A stretch of DNA of 63,435 nt, the filler included, from Octopus bimaculoides (lineage: Eukaryota), in the NCBI RefSeq assembly GCF_001194135.2. It is 8 parts of 7 records of this genome, joined end to end, with 100 filler letters (N's around TTAATTAATTAA, not from the genome) between each part and the next. Parts side by side here need not be neighbours in the genome. Positions count along the whole stretch, not along the records: positions 29,382 to 36,502 come from NC_069004.1; 7 more parts are not named here. One strand, given 5' to 3'. The translations under genes were made by a program, and so were the position numbers. A model generated the notes under the pieces. It saw only the letters and a program-made list of their open reading frames with translations. It searched no databases and had not been told where the DNA came from. Positions 29,382 to 36,602 of the stretch are shown one piece after another; the first letter of the stretch is position 1; every line of letters begins with the position of its first letter.

Positions 29382-29456
<75 letters not shown>

Positions 29457-29639
29457 TCTCTGCGTGCCTAATTCGTAAATGTATTACGATGATACTCCAG
29501 GATGCATTGTCGTGGATGTTTCTGGGGTCGTAGGACATTTCGGGACTTTGAAAATCAGGTCTTCACTCTCACCTAATTGATCCAGCAGAGGTGATCAGGT
29601 CCCAACTTGTATCCCCAGAAGTAGTAAACCACTGGTCTA

Positions 29640-30910
29640 CCTTCTTTATCTAAAACCATCCAATGAACTTCTACGTAACGTCGGTGATGGAAAATATGGT
29701 CTTACTTTTTGCCATGCCAATAACTCCCAATCAGAGTTCCGCCATACTGGTAACCAGTGGTTCCTCTATATCTGCATGGATTTCTCCTTGGAGAAGAAGC
29801 TGTCGCTCTTTGACGTTACCATTCTGGCGGATTGGAAATTATCCCAACCTGAACATATAATCGCCATAGACCCAACCTGAGCTTTCTGCTTCAACTGTTC
29901 TCTGCCGCTTACAACTCTCTGGCGGCACTGCGCTTCTGACCCGAGCAAACTTCAATAACAATCGGAAATCGAGCAGAGATTCGACAACGCAGATGAACAC
30001 ATCAAATCGAAATCAAACACCCTGCAAGTCTGGATCCCTCACTCTTCTTGTATTTTGACACAAGATTACAGAAAAGGGTTCCATCTAATGCAACATCTGC
30101 AAGAAAGCAGCCAAGAAGAACCAAGTTATGCACTACAAATCGACCATCCCTCTGTCTATATACGAAAGGAAATCTCACGTAAAAGTGACAGGTGCAACGA
30201 TTCAGCTGACAATGCTACCAACACCAAAATGCTCCGGATATCCTACAAAACAACGGCTACCCACCATATTTCGACATAAAGCAGCATATAAACAGTAATA
30301 TATATGTTAAAGTTTATAAACGTCATAAGAAGGCCCATACTCCCAAGACAGATCCGTGCTTCGTAAAATTACCCTACTTAGACGACAGAGCTACTGCTGC
30401 AATCCATTTTGCGAACGGACTAAAGATACAGTTGATACATTCCAGTCTATCTCTAAAAACTTACTGCCCAGAAATCGTACAAATAATATCGTTGAGTGCA
30501 CACTGTCTTATGCCACTTCGACAATTTTAGAATGTGCTCGAGGGCCGACGTGGTCTATGATACAGTCTGCAGGAAGTGTTATCCGTCCTACATTGAGAGC
30601 ACCATCATCTGCATTAAAAAATGGCGAACGCTCAAACATTTTAGTTCATATTTACCCGCCAGATTTAACTGTATCTGTCAGGATCACGGAATGTAACACA
30701 GCCTGCGAACCAAGAAGGCTATCCTCATTGATAAGGTGAAACCAGTAATAAGCAAGAACTACACGAAACAGTCTATCATAACTACATCAACCCGCGCTGT
30801 CACTATACTCTCCTACGTGTATGAGCAACCATATAAGTTATATTCCTTCTCCTGTTAATCTACGTGTCTTGATGAAAGGTGTCATAACCTCCGAAATACA
30901 GAAGAAATAT
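29640..30910 (+). mobile_element. Degenerate Penelope-like element (GIY-YIG remnant and decayed hammerhead end)
   Basis: SRADVVYDTVCRKCYPSYIEST (~30520-30600) and RTKKAILIDKVKPVISK (~30705-30755) resemble PLE GIY-YIG motifs. UUGAUGA..GAAA remnant at 30869-30900. Confidence 0.6.
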
Positions 30911-30992
30911 AAGGTAAGACTTGATCTATTTTTCTCTCTTCACTTTTGTACCTAATTTCAAATTGTTTCGGCTTTTATTTTATGTAAAAACT

Positions 30993-32283
30993 GGAGGCGC
31001 AATGGTCCAGTGGTTAGGGCAGCGGACTCGCGGTAGTTCTTTTTCCAGCGAAGGCAAACAGAAATGTAATCACCAATTGTTTTAAGGCACACAAGAGAAA
31101 ACNNNNNNNNNNNNNNNNNNNNNNNNNNNNNNNNNNNNNNNNNNNNNNNNNNNNNNNNNNNNNNNNNNNNNNNNNNNNNNNNNNNNNNNNNNNNNNNNNN
31201 NNNNNNNNNNNNNNNNNNNNNNNNNNNNNNNNNNNNNNNNNNNNNNNNNNNNNNNNNNNNNNNNNNNNNNNNNNNNNNNNNNNNNNNNNNNNNNNNNNNN
31301 NNNNNNNNNNNNNNNNNNNNNNNNNNNNNNNNNNNNNNNNNNNNNNNNNNNNNNNNNNNNNNNNNNNNNNNNNNNNNNNNNNNNNNNNNNNNNNNNNNNN
31401 NNNNNNNNNNNNNNNNNNNNNNNNNNNNNNNNNNNNNNNNNNNNNNNNNNNNNNNNNNNNNNNNNNNNNNNNNNNNNNNNNNNNNNNNNNNNNNNNNNNN
31501 NNNNNNNNNNNNNNNNNNNNNNNNNNNNNNNNNNNNNNNNNNNNNNNNNNNNNNNNNNNNNNNNNNNNNNNNNNNNNNNNNNNNNNNNNNNNNNNNNNNN
31601 NNNNNNNNNNNNNNNNNNNNNNNNNNNNNNNNNNNNNNNNNNNNNNNNNNNNNNNNNNNNNNNNNNNNNNNNNNNNNNNNNNNNNNNNNNNNNNNNNNNN
31701 NNNNNNNNNNNNNNNNNNNNNNNNNNNNNNNNNNNNNNNNNNNNNNNNNNNNNNNNNNNNNNNNNNNNNNNNNNNNNNNNNNNNNNNNNNNNNNNNNNNN
31801 NNNNNNNNNNNNNNNNNNNNNNNNNNNNNNNNNNNNNNNNNNNNNNNNNNNNNNNNNNNNNNNNNNNNNNNNNNNNNNNNNNNNNNNNNNNNNNNNNNNN
31901 NNNNNNNNNNNNNNNNNNNNNNNNNNNNNNNNNNNNNNNNNNNNNNNNNNNNNNNNNNNNNNNNNNNNNNNNNNNNNNNNNNNNNNNNNNNNNNNNNNNC
32001 CTATAGCTCCACGAGGCACCGGCAGGGGATGGTGGCGAACCCTGCTGTACTCTTTCACCACAACTTTCTCTCACTCTTACTTCCTGTTTCTGTTGTGCCT
32101 GTAATTCAAAGGGTCAGCCTTGTCACACTCTGTGTCACGCTGAATATCCCCCGAGAACTACGTTATGGGTACACGTGTCTGTGGAGTGCTCAGCCACTTG
32201 CACGTTAATTTCACGAGCAGGCTGTTCCGTTGATCGGATCAACTGGAACCCTCAACGTCGTAAGCGACGGAGTGCCAACAACA
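30993..32283 (+). mobile_element. tRNA-derived SINE (GGAGGCGCAATGG family) split by other sequence and a gap
   Basis: Head at 30993-31032; body at 32000-32283 near-identical to 18055-18332. Confidence 0.75.
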
Positions 32284-32966
32284 AACTTTTATACTACTGG
32301 AAAAAGAAAAAAAGTAAAGAAAAAGCGGGAAATGTGTGCATGTGGAAAATGAAGAGGAGACATACCCTCTCCTTCTCCTTCTGTTCTGCTTGTCTGTGGC
32401 CAAACACCATGCATACATATATACATACACACACAAGTATGTATATATGAGTATGTATATATGTGTATGTATATATACATGCATATATATGTATGTGTGT
32501 ATACACACACACACACACATTCATTCGTCCGAAGTTAAAGCATGTGTGTGTGTATGCATGTTTGTATGTGTATGTGTGTTTGTATGTGTGTATGTGTGTT
32601 TGTATGTTGTGTGTGTTTCTGTATGCGTGTTTGTATGTGTGTGTGTATGATTATATGTGTATGTGTGCTTGTATGTTGTGTGTGTGTATGTGTGTGTGTG
32701 TGTGTGTGTGTGTTTTCCTTAATCGCAGCAAACCTGAATGACGTCACAAAGCGGAGCACAAACTGATGAGAAATAGCAAGAGAGAAAGAGAGGCAGAGAA
32801 TGAATGGGTAGTTGTGAAATAGTAAGACAAAGAAAGAGAAAGAAAGAGAGGGAGAAAGATCAAAGAGAGGGAAAGGTTAAAAAGAGAGTCAATTTTTTAA
32901 ACTGCTATATTATATCATTGATATTGACTTAAAGTTATTTCTGTTGTCTCCTGGATATTCTCTGAT

Positions 32967-35900
32967 ATGGTTGACCCTATTTGCGCAGACGACGTAGAAA
33001 AGTTTTTAGAAGAAAACCCAGAATTCACTAAAAACTGGATTTCTAAACACAATGCTAATACTTCTGAAGAGAAAGTTGTTGTGGTCCCGTCTTTAAGACA
33101 TTCATTTATAGACTGCGTTAAAATGATTATTTCTCGAAACAGCAGCATTGGTGTAAACAAGAATACGGTATTAACCGTAAAGGACACTTACAGAGAAATC
33201 ATGAAGGAATTGGCTTCCGAGCTTAATGAAGATAAATTGTGTTATGCGGTTCTTCAGAACACGTGTATTTTGATCCAGTCTAATAGCGCGAGTATTTATT
33301 TGGCTCGAGGTACCGGAAAGACGCGTTATCTTATATCTAAATACGTCGATGTGACCGCTACTTCTGACAGAAATGAAACCCTTCATTCAGAACCCAATAT
33401 CATTCGTATACCATTCGGTGAAGGAATCTTGGGTTATGTAGCTGAAAGTAAGCGTTCTTTGAACATCAAAGATGTTACTCGGCCTCATCATTCTTTAAGT
33501 GATGACAAATCGATTGGACTTCAAGTCCAAAGTATTCTGTGTATGCCGATTCTAAATAAATACGATAATGTAATGGGTGTCGTTAATGTCCAGAACAGCA
33601 AAGAAAATGCTAATTTTTCTTTAGAAGATGAAGCCTTATTTGAGAACTTATTATCTGTTTGTGGAATCAGTATAGAAAATGCTCATTTATTTCAAGTCTG
33701 TCTTGAAGAATTTAAACGCCACCAGTTATTACTAAAGCTCGCCAACTGCATTCTGAAAGAACAGAACAATCTACCAAAGCTTATTTCTCAAATTTTGCAC
33801 CATGCCATGGCATTGATTGACAGTAGTAATATCAGCATCTATTTAACTGACAGTAACAAAGAAACAGTTGGTCCAAATATAAATTCTAAAGTGTTTCAGT
33901 TATTGAAAGAAGAGAAAGAAGCAAAAGAAGTGACAATAGATAGGAAATTTATAAAACCTGTTGAAAATAATTTGAAGAGTGAAAATGTATTCGATGTTTT
34001 CAATTTAAAATTTTCTTCTGAAATCTCGTTTCCAAATCTCAAAGACAGTGAAATGTGGTTACTTGGTATGCCGATAAAAGATTCCACGGGAAACACTATT
34101 GGTTGTATAATGTTTGTCAGAGATTCGGTGGACGATTTTAGTGAAAATGATATCAAGATGATGAAAGCATTTACAACTTATTGCGGTTTGAGTATCTTCA
34201 ACTGTCGTTTGTACGAGAGTTCAGTTAAGTTGCTGTCTCGGGCGAAAATAATCGATGATGTTATTGCCTACAACAAGACGTGTGATCAAAAAACAATCGA
34301 TCGTTATCTATCAATGGAGATGAAATCTTCAGAACACTATCAAATATACAATTTTCACTTCGATGATTCATTATATACAGATGATGATACTGTTTTAATA
34401 TGTGCCCGGTTGCTTTTAAAGCTTGATGTTGTAAATGTTCTGAATATATCTATGGCTTATTTATATAGGTTTATTGTAACAGTGAAAGACAGCTATCGTC
34501 CAGTTACCTACCATAACTGGCGCCATGTTTTAAACGTTACACAATCAATGTTCTGTATGTTGACTACAGGTAAATTAGAGACTTACTTCACGAAATTCCA
34601 AATGATCTGTTTATTAATTGCTTGTTTGCTTCATGATCTTGAGCACAGAGGGCAGAACAATTCGTTCCAAGTGAGAATAGCATCTTCGCTTGCTACATTG
34701 TACAGTACGTCTATCTTAGAGCACTATCATATAAGTCGAAATATGATGATATTAAACAAATCCGGAACTAATATCTTTAAAAATCTTCCAGTTGAAAAGT
34801 ATCGAGAGGGTTTCAGACTAATAGAGAAAGCAATCTTTGCCACGGATCTCAAGAACCATTTTGAGAATAGGAGCATTTTTAGACACGAAATAGAAAGTGA
34901 TCACAGAACGTTTGATTCTCTTGAGAGTATTGATTTACTAATTGGCATGGTGATGACTGCAGCAGATCTGTCGGCTGCGACTAAGCCATGGGAAATTCAA
35001 AGAAAGACAGCCATTAAAGTCATATCTGAATACTTCGAGCAAGGAGAGCTGGATAAAGCTTTAAAATCTCAAGTCTTGTCTTTGGTGGATCGCGAGAAAA
35101 AATGTGAAATAACTAGGGCACAAGTTGATTTTATTGATTTTGTGTGTATGCCGATTTATAAACTTTTGGTAAAATTAGAAACGTGTTTGAGACCATTATA
35201 TGACGGGTGCATCGCAAACGGAACACACTGGCGTCTTATTGCTGCTGATAAAGAAAAGTTTAATATCGATGAAGAATTAATTGTTGCTTCACATCAGAGA
35301 TTAAGAGTTGACCAACCAAAACAGCACCAAGAATTCCGAAGTAGCTCAATGGATATTCAAACTCGAAATAACAAGATTTTAGAACCAATATTAGATAAAT
35401 TTCGATCACCTATAGCATTAAATTTAATTACAGAACATAATTCCTCCGTATGGTGTCATTCAGAACCATCGTTAATACCTAAACTAAAGAAGCTTACTAT
35501 GTTAAAATCACCAATTTCTGCTTGTCCATGGCAAGAAAGCATTGTGAAGTTTACTATGGCAGTACCTCATAAAAAAGTTGAAATGAAAGAAAAATCTTGT
35601 CAGACAGACATGTCAGTCGTCAAATTACACACCAGAAACACTGTACAAATATATAATTCCAAAGGTAAAATTACTTCAGAAGGTCCGATGAAAGTTAGCC
35701 TTCCAGTTAAAACAACTTATTCAGCCACAGTTCATTCAGATATCAATGAATTTGCAACTAACAAACACTCGAATAGCAATGCTACATCTATGCAACATCA
35801 AAATTATATCCCAACATTGGCTCTTTCACCGAATTCACTGAGAACATCAATAGACGTCAAAACATTCATAAAACATACTGATTCGACTCACCTTTTCGAT

Positions 35901-36149
35901 AATGTTGAACAAGTCGTCACCGATGATATTTATAGAGTTTCTGAAAAACTAAACAGAAAAATAGGGCAAAATTTGACTGTAAGTGATTCGATCTCTACTG
36001 TAAATGAATATAATGAGGCTCCTACTGTAGAATATGACTTTACACCAAATATTAATCAGTTTCGAAAGCGAAAATGTTTGAAGAAAATTCCCGTTAATAT
36101 GAAGGACGAGCAAGACATTTTGAAGAGTTATTTGTGTGTGATTTCATAG
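32967..36149 (+). CDS. Intronless GAF-GAF class I cyclic-nucleotide phosphodiesterase, PDE5/6/11 family, with C-terminal CaaX
   Basis: Uninterrupted 1060-aa ORF; in-frame stop 42 nt upstream. N-terminal VEKFLEENPEF; GAF-A (SILCMPILN..VMGV); GAF-B. Catalytic YHNWRH (H516/H520), HD (H556/D557), LEHYH, ATDL, AADLSA (D667), invariant Q719. Ends CVIS*. Exact orthology (PDE5, 6 or 11) not resolved. Confidence 0.95.
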   Translation: MVDPICADDVEKFLEENPEFTKNWISKHNANTSEEKVVVVPSLRHSFIDCVKMIISRNSSIGVNKNTVLTVKDTYREIMKELASELNEDKLCYAVLQNTCILIQSNSASIYLARGTGKTRYLISKYVDVTATSDRNETLHSEPNIIRIPFGEGILGYVAESKRSLNIKDVTRPHHSLSDDKSIGLQVQSILCMPILNKYDNVMGVVNVQNSKENANFSLEDEALFENLLSVCGISIENAHLFQVCLEEFKRHQLLLKLANCILKEQNNLPKLISQILHHAMALIDSSNISIYLTDSNKETVGPNINSKVFQLLKEEKEAKEVTIDRKFIKPVENNLKSENVFDVFNLKFSSEISFPNLKDSEMWLLGMPIKDSTGNTIGCIMFVRDSVDDFSENDIKMMKAFTTYCGLSIFNCRLYESSVKLLSRAKIIDDVIAYNKTCDQKTIDRYLSMEMKSSEHYQIYNFHFDDSLYTDDDTVLICARLLLKLDVVNVLNISMAYLYRFIVTVKDSYRPVTYHNWRHVLNVTQSMFCMLTTGKLETYFTKFQMICLLIACLLHDLEHRGQNNSFQVRIASSLATLYSTSILEHYHISRNMMILNKSGTNIFKNLPVEKYREGFRLIEKAIFATDLKNHFENRSIFRHEIESDHRTFDSLESIDLLIGMVMTAADLSAATKPWEIQRKTAIKVISEYFEQGELDKALKSQVLSLVDREKKCEITRAQVDFIDFVCMPIYKLLVKLETCLRPLYDGCIANGTHWRLIAADKEKFNIDEELIVASHQRLRVDQPKQHQEFRSSSMDIQTRNNKILEPILDKFRSPIALNLITEHNSSVWCHSEPSLIPKLKKLTMLKSPISACPWQESIVKFTMAVPHKKVEMKEKSCQTDMSVVKLHTRNTVQIYNSKGKITSEGPMKVSLPVKTTYSATVHSDINEFATNKHSNSNATSMQHQNYIPTLALSPNSLRTSIDVKTFIKHTDSTHLFDNVEQVVTDDIYRVSEKLNRKIGQNLTVSDSISTVNEYNEAPTVEYDFTPNINQFRKRKCLKKIPVNMKDEQDILKSYLCVIS

Positions 36150-36208
36150 TGTTTCTTGTTAACGTGGTTTGCTTAAAATGTTTCTTGTTGGATTTGTACA
36201 GAGAGTAG

Positions 36209-36248
<40 letters not shown>

Positions 36249-36319
36249 CATATCTCTTTATGTATGAATATGTATTATAGAGATCGTGCCACAACGTAGA
36301 TGTTGTTTTCTCATTGGAT

Positions 36320-36325
36320 AATAAA
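36320..36325 (+). terminator. Candidate polyadenylation signal of the PDE gene
   Basis: AATAAA ~170 nt after the stop; AT-rich context, motif only. Confidence 0.3.
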
Positions 36326-36602
36326 TAGATAATAAGCAGACGACCAGCAATCGATTTAACTTTCTAAAGATATTTGTGTTACTCTTTAATTAATAGTTAT
36401 TTTCAGCCGAATCGATAAATCATACCGAGATTTTCTTACCGAGAAATCACCGGGTCTTGACTCGAAGAATTCATCAATCCCTCGCAGACTGTTAAAGGTG
36501 ACNNNNNNNNNNNNNNNNNNNNNNNNNNNNNNNNNNNNNNNNNNNNTTAATTAATTAANNNNNNNNNNNNNNNNNNNNNNNNNNNNNNNNNNNNNNNNNN
36601 NN

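What the first reader, a model, noticed from the sequence alone, without database searches (positions are those of the whole stretch)
32967..36149. Intact 3.2-kb intronless PDE5/6/11-family phosphodiesterase: probable functional retrogene
Seen: one unbroken 1060-codon ORF in TE-dense DNA, with every first-shell metal ligand intact. By-eye alignment to human PDE5A gives a near-constant offset (H613/H617/H653/D654/D764 = H516/H520/H556/D557/D667). Established: animal PDE5/6/11 genes are normally split into roughly 20 exons. Inference: an old retrocopy under purifying selection, divergent enough (HDLEH, EYFEQGE) to be a neofunctionalised, possibly cephalopod-specific and tissue-restricted paralog. 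No poly(A) remnant or TSD is visible.
Basis: partly seen in the sequence, partly recalled or inferred. Interest (0 to 1): 0.8.

Follow-up and report, generated by a model that had tools for sequence, protein, structure and literature searches.

The report
Intronless octopus PDE5/6 gene in array
This is an intact, selectively maintained cGMP-phosphodiesterase gene of Octopus bimaculoides; it is not a lone retrocopy but one member of an octopod-specific tandem array of intronless PDE5/6-type genes that appears to have replaced the usual multi-exon gene.

Summary
The source is Octopus bimaculoides chromosome CM046624.1.

The lone-retrogene reading does not hold. The gene (paralog "B") sits in a tandem array of at least 7 paralog groups, 41-56% identical to each other. 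Every full-length member I could read is a single uninterrupted ORF, in O. bimaculoides, O. sinensis and O. vulgaris. That includes the slow-evolving deepest copy, E. An Argonauta protein falls inside the clade.

The clade is sister to the gastropod and bivalve PDE5/6-type genes. No intron-containing PDE5/6-type parent turned up in any octopod protein set. Octopus PDE11, by contrast, spans 293 kb.

Paralogs share a CRE-bearing promoter block, so B arose by DNA duplication of a gene that was already intronless. Any retroposition was older, and the parent has since been lost.

B is constrained but fast-evolving: core dN/dS is about 0.4, the tail is near 1, and 0 of 2000 neutral simulations keep the ORF open. 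Its nucleotide pocket and GAF-A motif are altered. One unidentified family member is reported as testis-only in O. sinensis. Interest is moderate.

The parts
32967..36149 (+). Single-exon CDS of paralog B, 1060 aa plus stop: a PDE5/6-type GAF-PDE. Source coordinates: O. bimaculoides CM046624.1:10,428,409-10,431,591.
   Evidence: Orthologs are intact in O. sinensis (P0002), O. vulgaris (P0221) and a third species (P0003).
32967..33191 (+). Short N-terminal region (aa 1-75). The motif 'VEKFLEENPEF' is shared with all family members. No PDE5-like R[RK]xS PKG site is visible.
   Evidence: L14 nearly invariant; partly low pLDDT
33192..33701 (+). GAF-A (aa ~76-245). The NKFDE motif is present but degraded in B (N210-S-K...F217...D221-E222).
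33762..34262 (+). GAF-B (aa ~266-432). The NK of its NKFDE-like motif is lost in the whole cephalopod clade.
34287..35306 (+). Catalytic domain (aa ~441-780; Pfam PDEase_I covers 515-747). It holds H516, H520, H556, D557, D667, Q719 (Gln switch), Q678, F722 and W755.
35310..36062 (+). Long, fast-evolving C-terminal tail (aa ~782-1032). Residues 782-985 are confidently predicted disordered; a weakly predicted helix lies at about 975-1002.
   Evidence: pLDDT about 25; omega 0.5-1.3; no database match
36063..36089 (+). Conserved basic-Cys motif R1033-K-R-K-C1037-L-K-K-I, found in paralog groups A, B, C, D and E and in relaxed form in ENA P0226.
36135..36146 (+). CaaX box C1057-V-I-S1060, a predicted farnesylation signal, followed by the stop codon at 36147-36149.
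32739..32746 (.). Perfect palindromic CRE (TGACGTCA), 228 nt upstream of the ATG. It is conserved in B orthologs and in paralogs A and E; C and F carry the variant TTACGTCA at the same place.
32760..32966 (+). Putative proximal promoter and 5' UTR. It is GA-rich (tandem repeats at 32816-32888) with a TATA-like 'TATATTATAT' about 55-60 nt before the ATG and a good Kozak context (gatATGG). Function is inferred only.
36320..36325 (+). AATAAA polyadenylation signal 171 nt after the stop. The equivalent signals lie at +124 to +151 in O. sinensis and O. vulgaris.
32543..32713 (.). (TG)n-type microsatellite bounding the conserved upstream block.

Best explanation
The ORF encodes a working, membrane-tethered cGMP phosphodiesterase of the PDE5/6 type. 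Two N-terminal GAF domains form the dimerisation and allosteric module. The HD-type catalytic domain keeps every metal ligand and the glutamine-switch network that favours cGMP. About 200 disordered residues then link to a polybasic-Cys motif and a CaaX box (CVIS) that should be farnesylated, as in other invertebrate PDE5/6-type enzymes such as Drosophila Pde6.

In evolutionary terms it is paralog 'B' of an octopod-specific, tandemly arrayed family of intronless genes. Together these genes are the co-orthologs of the single multi-exon PDE5/6-type gene of other molluscs. All introns were lost once, at the base of the family. The most economical route is a processed cDNA copy that replaced the parent ('retrogene replacement'). 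The family then expanded by DNA-level tandem and segmental duplication that carried along a compact promoter containing a CRE.

Paralog E kept the conserved role (core omega 0.11). B is a fast-evolving derived copy (core omega about 0.4) with an altered nucleotide pocket and a weakened GAF-A NKFDE motif, so it probably has a sub- or neo-functionalised and possibly tissue-restricted role.

Shown here: the ORF, domains, motifs, array, intronless state of all readable full-length members, phylogenetic position, selection and shared promoter motif. Inferred: enzymatic activity and cGMP preference, farnesylation, CREB control, retroposition as the mechanism of intron loss, and loss of the parent.
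For: Domains and fold: (PDE5A E=1e-109; Foldseek best hits are PDE6 and PDE6C full-length chains; catalytic domain TM 0.85-0.94 to PDE5A). Catalytic and Gln-switch residues are intact in four species. CaaX with preceding basic residues is general to invertebrate PDE5/6-type proteins and absent from PDE11-type. The basic-Cys motif is conserved across paralogs.

Array: O. bimaculoides order is Z(-) A B C within 23 kb, with F 650 kb away. O. sinensis and O. vulgaris arrays carry consecutive accessions XP_029650736-743 and CAI9740184-195, spanning more than 128 kb.

Intronless: gene span equals 3 x aa + 3 for A, B, C, D and F. E maps as one ORF to L009:10001-13123. Control: octopus PDE11 spans 293 kb for 872 aa.

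Phylogeny: the clade of octopus paralogs, Argonauta P0234 and two unnamed ENA proteins has 100% bootstrap. It is sister to the gastropod and bivalve PDE5/6-type genes and separate from PDE11. No other octopod PDE5/6-type protein appears.

Selection: omega values; all CDS indels are in frame; 0 of 2000 neutral simulations keep the ORF open; omega=1 is rejected at p=1.4e-12.

Promoter: 9 of 14 perfect CREs in 178 kb lie 219-413 nt upstream of A, B or E start codons, and C and F carry TTACGTCA in register.

Expression hint: a 'cGMP-specific PDE-like' gene is testis-only in O. sinensis (PMC11202624).
Against: There is no direct transcript evidence for B itself. The third-species contig L003 is colinear with genomic DNA and is not proof of expression, and the testis-expressed gene in PMC11202624 could be any paralog. 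No poly(A) or TSD relic supports retroposition. Synteny with the ancestral PDE5/6 locus was not examined, so intron loss in place cannot be excluded. Absence of an intron-bearing parent rests on annotated protein sets and a word-indexed search, not on a tBLASTn of whole genomes. I could not directly verify the exon structure of a non-cephalopod mollusc ortholog because the look-up failed; that rests on the many NCBI splice isoforms listed and on PMC4906994. The tree is neighbour-joining with long branches. B's pocket changes, its variable EH[Y/R/H]H site and a core omega of 0.4-0.5 leave room for reduced or altered activity. CaaX processing and CRE function are predictions.
Confidence: 0.72

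Rival explanations
1. One reading: this locus is itself an old retrocopy of an extant intron-containing PDE5/6/11 gene located elsewhere in the octopus genome, later neofunctionalised.
For: The CDS is intronless, divergent from other animals (35-38% identity) and under purifying selection. A family member shows testis-only expression, as is typical of retrogenes.
Against: The flanking genes are paralogous intronless PDEs in tandem. The promoter block with the CRE is shared among paralogs. Even the basal paralog E is intronless and in the same array. No intron-bearing PDE5/6-type protein was found in four octopod proteomes. PDE11, the only multi-exon relative, lies outside the clade. There is no poly(A) or TSD.
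Confidence: 0.05
2. The family is the same, but the introns were lost in place at the ancestral PDE5/6 locus. This would happen through recombination or gene conversion with a processed cDNA, or by stepwise intron loss, rather than by retroposition to a new site followed by loss of the parent.
For: No parent gene remains. No retroposition scars are present. The genes have a proper compact promoter with conserved CRE sites, which is easier to explain if the original promoter was kept.
Against: Simultaneous loss of roughly 20 introns by conversion is rare. The N-terminal region is shorter than in canonical orthologs: family members align from about residue 1-10, whereas PDE5A aligns from 153. 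That could reflect a new 5' end. Synteny was not tested here.
Confidence: 0.25
3. B is an active enzyme but no longer a cGMP-specific, cGMP-regulated PDE. Its remodelled pocket and degraded GAF-A motif give it a different substrate preference (dual or cAMP) or make it constitutively unregulated.
For: Changes specific to B lie next to the substrate pocket: AIT to AAT, F to Y in EYFEQGE, M to A before Q719 and G to D after it. The EHHH site is variable. NK becomes NSK in GAF-A, and D becomes H in the third species. Core omega is elevated. Sister paralog A has actually lost the invariant Gln.
Against: The residues that fix the Gln orientation for cGMP in PDE5 (Q775, A767 and W853 equivalents: Q678, A670, W755) are all retained, together with Q719 and F722.
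Confidence: 0.2
4. B is a non-functional or decaying copy whose ORF happens still to be open.
For: The tail evolves at omega of about 1. The array contains damaged copies: A2 is frameshifted in O. vulgaris, and there are C-like fragments.
Against: The ORF is intact in four species despite 356 substitutions between the two most distant, while 0 of 2000 neutral simulations stay open (mean 11 stops). All indels are in frame. Omega is significantly below 1 (p=1.4e-12). The last 40 residues and all catalytic ligands are conserved.
Confidence: 0.03

Closest known systems
[quoted passage not shown]
   Same: The GAF-A, GAF-B and catalytic architecture is the same, as is the C-terminal extension ending in basic residues plus a CaaX box. 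The octopus clade is sister to the gastropod and bivalve members. The cGMP-type Gln-switch network is retained.
   Different: The gene is intronless and tandemly multiplied instead of a single multi-exon gene. Branches are 2-3 times longer. The tail is about 290 aa against a typical 50-150. There is an extra conserved basic-Cys motif 20-31 residues before the CaaX cysteine. The GAF-B NK motif is lost clade-wide.
Human PDE5A
   Same: It is the best PDB sequence match (E=1e-109), colinear from GAF-A to the end of the catalytic domain. All metal ligands and H613, Q817, F820, Q775 and W853 equivalents are present. The catalytic domain model superposes at TM 0.85-0.94.
   Different: There is no long N-terminal regulatory region with the PKG phospho-site; B has only 75 aa before GAF-A and no R[RK]xS. 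PDE5A has no CaaX and no long tail. Several inhibitor and substrate pocket residues differ. PDE5A is a multi-exon gene (own knowledge; PMC4906994 for the shared PDE5/6/11 exon-intron organisation).
Vertebrate PDE6 catalytic subunits (PDE6A/B/C)
   Same: These are the best full-length structural matches. They are C-terminally prenylated through a CaaX box (established knowledge).
   Different: The PDE6 gamma inhibitory subunit is a vertebrate novelty absent from invertebrates (PMC4906994). There is no evidence of a phototransduction role. The octopus clade branches with invertebrate PDE5/6-type genes.
Retrogene replacement (for example amphioxus SYCP1, PMC5803294) and tandemly expanded intronless gene families
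   Same: A multi-exon ancestral gene is represented in one lineage only by single-exon copies, and the parent is no longer detectable.
   Different: Here the intronless copy went on to form a large, fast-evolving tandem array with a shared promoter. Retroposition scars are gone and the mechanism is inferred, not shown.
PDE11 (dual-specificity GAF-PDE)
   Same: It has the same domain architecture and about 33-36% identity.
   Different: It forms a separate clade and lacks the CaaX and tail. The octopus PDE11 gene spans 293 kb.

Membership tests
Class I cyclic-nucleotide phosphodiesterase (Pfam PDEase_I, HD superfamily) | HD-domain catalytic core with the metal-binding H...H...HD...D set and the general-acid His | tested here: met
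   PF00233 E=1.2e-71 over aa 515-747. H516, H520, H556, D557 and D667 are present and conserved in four species.
GAF-PDE group (PDE2/5/6/10/11) | Two tandem N-terminal GAF domains followed by the catalytic domain | tested here: met
   Pfam GAF hit. Colinear alignment to PDE5A GAF-A, GAF-B and catalytic domain. The AF2 model shows two GAF folds joined by long helices. Foldseek hits full-length PDE6 and PDE2A.
PDE5/6-type lineage (as opposed to PDE11) | Phylogenetic placement with PDE5/6-type orthologs | tested here: met
   NJ trees: the octopus clade (100% bootstrap) is sister to the gastropod and bivalve 'cGMP-specific' genes, and PDE11 sequences are separate. Caveat: distance method, long branches, and no vertebrate PDE5/6 sequences in the tree.
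PDE5/6-type lineage (invertebrate, Drosophila Pde6-like) | C-terminal extension ending in a basic patch plus CaaX prenylation box | tested here: met
   B ends ...RKRKCLKKIP...YLCVIS. CaaX is present in most PDE5/6-type hits and in none of the PDE11-type hits. Actual prenylation is not testable here.
cGMP-specific PDE | Invariant Gln (PDE5 Q817) held in the cGMP orientation by Q775, A767 and W853, plus the hydrophobic clamp F820 | tested here: met
   Q719, Q678, A670, W755 and F722 are all present. This is a sequence-level test only; substrate preference needs kinetics.
cGMP-regulated GAF-A (PDE5/6) | Intact NK(X)nF(X)3DE motif in GAF-A | tested here: inconclusive
   N210, F217, D221 and E222 are present, but the Lys is displaced (N-S-K). 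The third species has D to H. All other paralogs keep NK...F...DE.
PDE5 proper | N-terminal PKG/PKA phosphorylation site (R-K-I-S, Ser102 in human) upstream of GAF-A | tested here: not met
   Only 75 residues precede GAF-A, and they contain no R[RK]xS motif (sequence; the alignment starts at PDE5A residue 153).
Vertebrate PDE6 | Inhibition by the P-gamma subunit and coupling to transducin | not testable with these tools
   P-gamma genes are absent from invertebrates according to PMC4906994, so membership is not expected.
Retrogene (processed retrocopy) | Intronless CDS where the family norm is multi-exon | tested here: met
   One ORF covers the whole protein. Octopus PDE11 spans 293 kb. Many splice isoforms are listed for other molluscs' orthologs. 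PMC4906994 describes the shared exon-intron organisation of PDE5/6/11.
Retrogene (processed retrocopy) | An identifiable intron-containing parent gene elsewhere in the genome | tested here: not met
   No such protein was found in O. bimaculoides, O. sinensis, O. vulgaris or Argonauta sets. The only 'multi-exon' model (CAI9740184) is a chimera of two adjacent single-exon genes. A genome-wide tBLASTn was not possible.
Retrogene (processed retrocopy) | Poly(A) tract and target-site duplications; no parental promoter | tested here: not met
   No poly(A) or TSD is present. B shares a promoter block with its paralogs, so B itself is a DNA-level duplicate. Erosion of scars from a much older founding event cannot be excluded.
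Tandemly duplicated gene family | Adjacent paralogs, largely in the same orientation, with homologous flanks; orthologous arrays in related species | tested here: met

The most novel reading that the evidence does not exclude
Octopods lost the ancestral multi-exon PDE5/6 gene and now rely entirely on descendants of one processed copy. That copy radiated into a fast-evolving, CREB-responsive tandem array. Derived members (B, and A with its lost glutamine switch) have acquired new substrate or regulatory properties and serve male-germline or sperm cGMP signalling, making this a lineage-specific rewiring of cyclic-nucleotide signalling in cephalopods.
Probability: 0.2. Interest if true: 0.6.

Novelty: new member of a known kind. 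Interest (0 to 1): 0.4.

Why it matters
The enzyme itself is an ordinary kind, a prenylated GAF-PDE of the PDE5/6 type, and its orthologs already carry automatic NCBI names. The gene-family picture is the noteworthy part. In octopods the whole PDE5/6 branch appears to exist only as intronless genes in one dynamic tandem array, evolving 2-3 times faster than in other animals. One conserved copy (E) sits beside several derived ones. I found no paper describing this. If confirmed, it would be a clean invertebrate example of retrogene replacement followed by tandem radiation in a core second-messenger enzyme. It would also give cephalopod biologists candidate genes for tissue-specific (possibly testis or sperm) cGMP control, and a natural series of pocket variants for PDE5-type pharmacology. 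A practical point: annotation pipelines mis-join these genes (see the chimeric CAI9740184 model), so copy numbers in published gene sets are unreliable.

Tried and rejected
(1) I first considered the 3.5-kb Logan contig L003 (SRR11869390) as possible transcript evidence. It is colinear with genomic DNA from the upstream (TG)n to the downstream microsatellite, promoter included, so it is best read as genomic and proves nothing about expression. Literature searches for the SRR accessions found nothing.

(2) The O. vulgaris model of E (CAI9740184, 1193 aa over 23.6 kb) looked like the sought multi-exon parent. tblastn shows E is one ORF (L009:10001-13123) and the model is spliced onto the N-terminus of the next array gene.

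(3) Look-ups for the genomic loci of P0052 (O. bimaculoides E) and Pecten P0057 failed. A direct exon count for a non-cephalopod mollusc ortholog was therefore not obtained.

(4) The 'venom phosphodiesterase' of Paroctopus salivary glands (PMC12607849) is the unrelated ENPP type.

(5) The supplements of PMC11202624 do not identify which paralog is the testis-specific 'Pde'.

(6) Pfam scans of small ORFs upstream of the gene, and of mariner-looking peptides downstream in L001, gave nothing significant.

(7) The search for TSD or poly(A) found only microsatellites and chance 12-17-mers.

(8) The organisms behind ENA proteins P0222 (ERZ21867824) and P0226 could not be identified. P0222's gene call used a TGA=Trp code, and its first 118 aa are spurious.

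(9) Bacterial promoter and terminator scans, tRNA scans and Rfam searches were judged irrelevant for this eukaryotic protein-coding locus and were not run.


Full report
OBSERVATION. The piece (29382-36502) contains one long ORF, 32967..36149 on the + strand, ATG-initiated, 1060 codons. Pfam finds a PDEase_I catalytic domain (aa 515-747, E=1.2e-71) and GAF domains. The best solved-structure sequence match is full-length human PDE5A (E=1.1e-109), colinear over query 76-770 and PDE5A 153-868 with no frame breaks. H516 and H520 lie in YHNWRH, H556 and D557 in HDLEH, and D667 in TAADLS. They sit at a constant offset of 97 from PDE5A H613/H617/H653/D654/D764. No poly(A) tract or target-site duplication is present; the gene is bounded by a (TG)n-type microsatellite (32543-32713) and a (TA)n (36209-36246).

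SOURCE AND NEIGHBOURHOOD. The protein is encoded at Octopus bimaculoides GCA_001194135.2, chromosome CM046624.1:10,428,409-10,431,591. Within 10 kb on either side lie further PDE genes. Upstream are a minus-strand copy (Z) and a plus-strand copy (A, whose N-terminus is lost in an assembly gap). Downstream is a plus-strand copy (C). A further member (F = P0050, 973 aa, 2922-nt gene) lies about 650 kb downstream on the same chromosome, between OATP genes.

The same situation holds in O. sinensis and O. vulgaris. In O. vulgaris the gene models CAI9740184-195 are essentially all members of this family and span more than 128 kb of OX597837.1. O. sinensis XP_029650736-743 are likewise consecutive.

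All-against-all comparison defines paralog groups A, B (ours), C, D, E, F and Z. Paralogs are 41-56% identical to each other, and orthologs across species are 78-98% identical. B has orthologs in O. sinensis (P0002, 88% aa), O. vulgaris (P0221) and an unidentified third octopus (P0003, 80% aa). Gene order differs between species: O. bimaculoides has Z(-) A B C, O. sinensis has D(-) B C, and O. vulgaris has A C D with B on the opposite strand nearby. O. vulgaris also has three D copies at least 90% identical to each other. The array is therefore still being rearranged.

ALL READABLE MEMBERS ARE INTRONLESS, AND NO PARENT IS FOUND. For A, B, C, D and F the annotated gene span equals three times the protein length plus a stop codon. 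The deepest paralog, E (O. bimaculoides UniProt A0A0L8HM88 = P0052), at first seemed multi-exon in O. vulgaris (1193 aa over 23.6 kb). However, tblastn shows P0052 residues 1-1046 mapping at 92% identity to one uninterrupted ORF (L009:10001-13123) ending in ...CVIA*. The annotated model is a chimera spliced onto the N-terminus of the next array gene.

As a control, octopus PDE11 (872 aa) spans about 293 kb. Other molluscs' PDE5/6-type genes are listed with many splice isoforms, and PDE5/6/11 are known to share an exon-intron organisation (PMC4906994). I could not fetch a non-cephalopod mollusc locus directly.

Three searches returned no other octopod PDE5/6-type protein: a profile search with the family, a search with E, and an exhaustive phmmer against 1.84 billion representatives. 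The proteomes concerned are in the database, because their PDE11s were found. Caveat: this is absence from annotated proteins, not from genomes.

PHYLOGENY. In neighbour-joining trees (794-797 columns, 100-200 bootstraps), all octopus paralogs form one clade with 100% support. The clade also contains Argonauta hians P0234 (GAB1609066.1) and two unnamed ENA proteins, P0222 and P0226. It sits as sister to the gastropod and bivalve PDE5/6-type genes and apart from PDE11. Inside it, A/B/C/D/F/Z form a 100%-supported group, E groups with P0226, and P0222 is basal. Argonauta's protein groups with D, so the radiation predates the Argonauta-Octopus split. P0222 is also a single 1155-codon ORF on its 260-kb contig.

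Branches are long: B to Pecten is 1.31 substitutions per site, against 0.47 for Aplysia to Pecten and 0.45 for octopus to Physella PDE11. The family is therefore the octopod co-ortholog set of the invertebrate PDE5/6-type gene. The intronless state is most simply ancestral to the whole set.

HOW B AROSE. Paralogs that share only about 45% protein identity still share an upstream block. A perfect palindromic CRE (TGACGTCA) lies at -219 to -236 from the ATG in B (four species) and A (three copies), and at -385 to -413 in E. C and F have TTACGTCA at -196 to -221, in register in the alignment, often followed by a second CGTCA half-site about 12 nt later. Across 178 kb of fetched loci there are 14 perfect CREs, about 2 expected from composition. 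Nine of them are in these promoter positions, although only 5.7% of the sequence lies within 600 nt upstream of a family ATG. These are not nine independent events, because they fall in three paralog groups.

A retrocopy does not carry its parent's promoter. B therefore arose by DNA-level tandem duplication of a gene that was already intronless. Whatever removed the introns happened once, earlier. The likeliest route is a processed cDNA that either inserted elsewhere and outlived its parent (retrogene replacement, as in PMC5803294) or converted the gene in place. I cannot distinguish these two without synteny data.

IS IT FUNCTIONAL? B's ORF is intact in four species. Between O. bimaculoides and the third species there are 356 nucleotide differences. 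In 2000 neutral simulations with that number and spectrum of substitutions the ORF never stayed open (mean 11.4 new stops). All CDS indels are in frame, and omega=1 is rejected (p=1.4e-12).

Constraint is nevertheless weak for a PDE. Omega is 0.36-0.47 for the N-terminus through the catalytic domain and 0.5-1.3 for the tail. The last 40 residues are more constrained against the distant species (0.11-0.16). By contrast E has a core omega of 0.11, C has 0.67 and A has 0.48. E therefore looks like the copy that keeps the ancestral role, and B like a derived, fast-evolving one.

ANATOMY AND LIKELY MECHANISM. The AlphaFold2 model gives confident GAF-A, GAF-B and catalytic domains (pLDDT 80-96), flexible H- and M-loops, and a disordered stretch at 782-985. 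Foldseek's best hits are full-length PDE6 and PDE6C chains (E about 1e-41), and the catalytic domain superposes on PDE5A at TM 0.85-0.94.

All metal ligands are retained. So are the invariant glutamine (Q719), its cGMP-orienting partners (Q678, A670, W755) and the clamp Phe (F722). The prediction is therefore a cGMP-preferring hydrolase.

B-specific changes line the pocket: AIT to AAT, F to Y in EYFEQGE, M to A before Q719 and G to D after it. The EHHH motif reads EH-Y/R/H-H in different B orthologs, even between near-identical O. sinensis and O. vulgaris. The GAF-A NKFDE motif is degraded (NK to NSK, and D to H in the third species), whereas other paralogs keep it. The GAF-B NK motif is lost clade-wide.

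The C-terminus carries R1033-K-R-K-C1037-L-K-K-I-P and then, 20 residues later, the CaaX box CVIS. A basic patch plus CaaX is near-universal in invertebrate PDE5/6-type proteins and absent from PDE11-type ones. The additional basic-Cys motif 20-31 residues before the CaaX cysteine is conserved in paralog groups A-E. By established CaaX rules, a final Ser predicts farnesylation. The polybasic stretch and C1037 could add electrostatic or palmitoyl membrane affinity (inference).

My reading is a dimeric, membrane-tethered cGMP-PDE on a long flexible leash. It would be transcribed from a compact CRE-containing promoter (a possible cyclic-nucleotide feedback loop), with a short 3' UTR (AATAAA at 36320).

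EXPRESSION. There is no direct evidence for B. [quoted passage not shown] Every O. sinensis protein I retrieved under that NCBI name belongs to this array, so at least one family member is probably testis-specific. The supplements do not say which one.

COMPARISON AND NOVELTY. Functionally and by membership this is a PDE5/6-type GAF-PDE of the prenylated invertebrate kind (Drosophila Pde6-like). It is not PDE11, it is not PDE5 proper because the N-terminal phospho-site is absent, and it is not vertebrate PDE6. [quoted passage not shown]

What I could not find described is the family-level pattern: an octopod-wide, intronless, tandemly radiating, fast-evolving replacement of the PDE5/6 gene. 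The striking 'lone functional retrogene' claim dissolves into a tandem family. The family story is worth a short follow-up.

LIMITS. The trees are distance-based with long branches. 'No parent' rests on annotated proteomes. The species behind P0003/P0051, P0222 and P0226 are unknown. Enzymatic activity, prenylation, CRE function and B's expression are predictions.

Noticed in passing
window 32739-32746; L004:2975-2982; L009:9588, 32786, 39624; L010:9765; L006:48-55: A perfect CRE (TGACGTCA) lies at a fixed distance (-219 to -236) upstream of the ATG in paralogs A and B, and at -385 to -413 in E. C and F carry TTACGTCA at -196 to -221. There are 14 CREs in 178 kb against about 2 expected. This suggests CREB/ATF control of the whole PDE array, a possible cyclic-nucleotide feedback loop.
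   Followed up: partly
L004:3197-6298 (paralog A, O. vulgaris); also L009:39843-42923: Paralog A has replaced the invariant substrate-binding glutamine (MQV to MEV), the supporting Gln (IQ to FE) and the clamp Phe (F to Y), yet remains an intact ORF with a CaaX box. It may have a changed substrate or be a pseudo-enzyme.
   Followed up: partly
L009:10001-33626 and 33006-36331: The O. vulgaris gene model CAI9740184 (1193 aa, 23.6 kb) is a chimera of single-exon gene E and the N-terminus of the next gene. That next gene (A2) is split by a frameshift near 33563-33623, so it is either a pseudogene or a sequence error.
   Followed up: yes
window 32000-32277 and 30992-31034, flanking the N gap 31103-31999: A SINE-like interspersed repeat of roughly 280-380 nt, with many 88-95% identical copies scattered through the PDE arrays of O. 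vulgaris, O. sinensis and O. bimaculoides. The assembly gap sits next to it.
   Followed up: partly
L010:3374-6790(-), L004:22597+, and CAI9740188/192/195: There are three D copies at least 90% identical to each other in O. vulgaris, and gene order and orientation differ among the three Octopus genomes. This points to recent segmental duplication and inversion within the array, or to assembly differences.
   Followed up: partly
L005:10001-12922 (P0050, paralog F): F lies about 650 kb from the main array between OATP/SLCO genes. It has a Glu/Gln-rich tail and has lost both the basic-Cys motif and the CaaX box, so it is predicted to be soluble.
   Followed up: no
window aa 585-588 (nt ~34720-34731) and orthologs: The normally invariant EHHH motif near the metal site reads EHYH (O. 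bimaculoides), EHRH (O. sinensis), EHHH (O. vulgaris) and DLHH (third species). The site flips even between near-identical species.
   Followed up: no
L011:10355-13822 (ENA ERZ21867824, ctg120600l): An unnamed 260-kb contig in an ENA assembly carries a single-exon 1155-aa PDE5/6-type gene that branches at the base of the octopus clade. Its database gene call used a TGA=Trp code and added 118 spurious N-terminal residues. A second ENA protein (P0226, ending KRKC...CSII) groups with E but has a degenerate active site (HDLDYEG, and Q to M).
   Followed up: partly
P0234 (Argonauta hians GAB1609066.1): Argonauta has a very divergent family member (31% identity to B, ending in CITS) that groups with paralog D. 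No Argonauta counterpart of E or B appeared in any search.
   Followed up: partly
window 32760-32890: A GA-rich tract (GAAAGAGA-type tandem repeats) lies between the CRE and the ATG. It is conserved among B orthologs but not in other paralogs.
   Followed up: no
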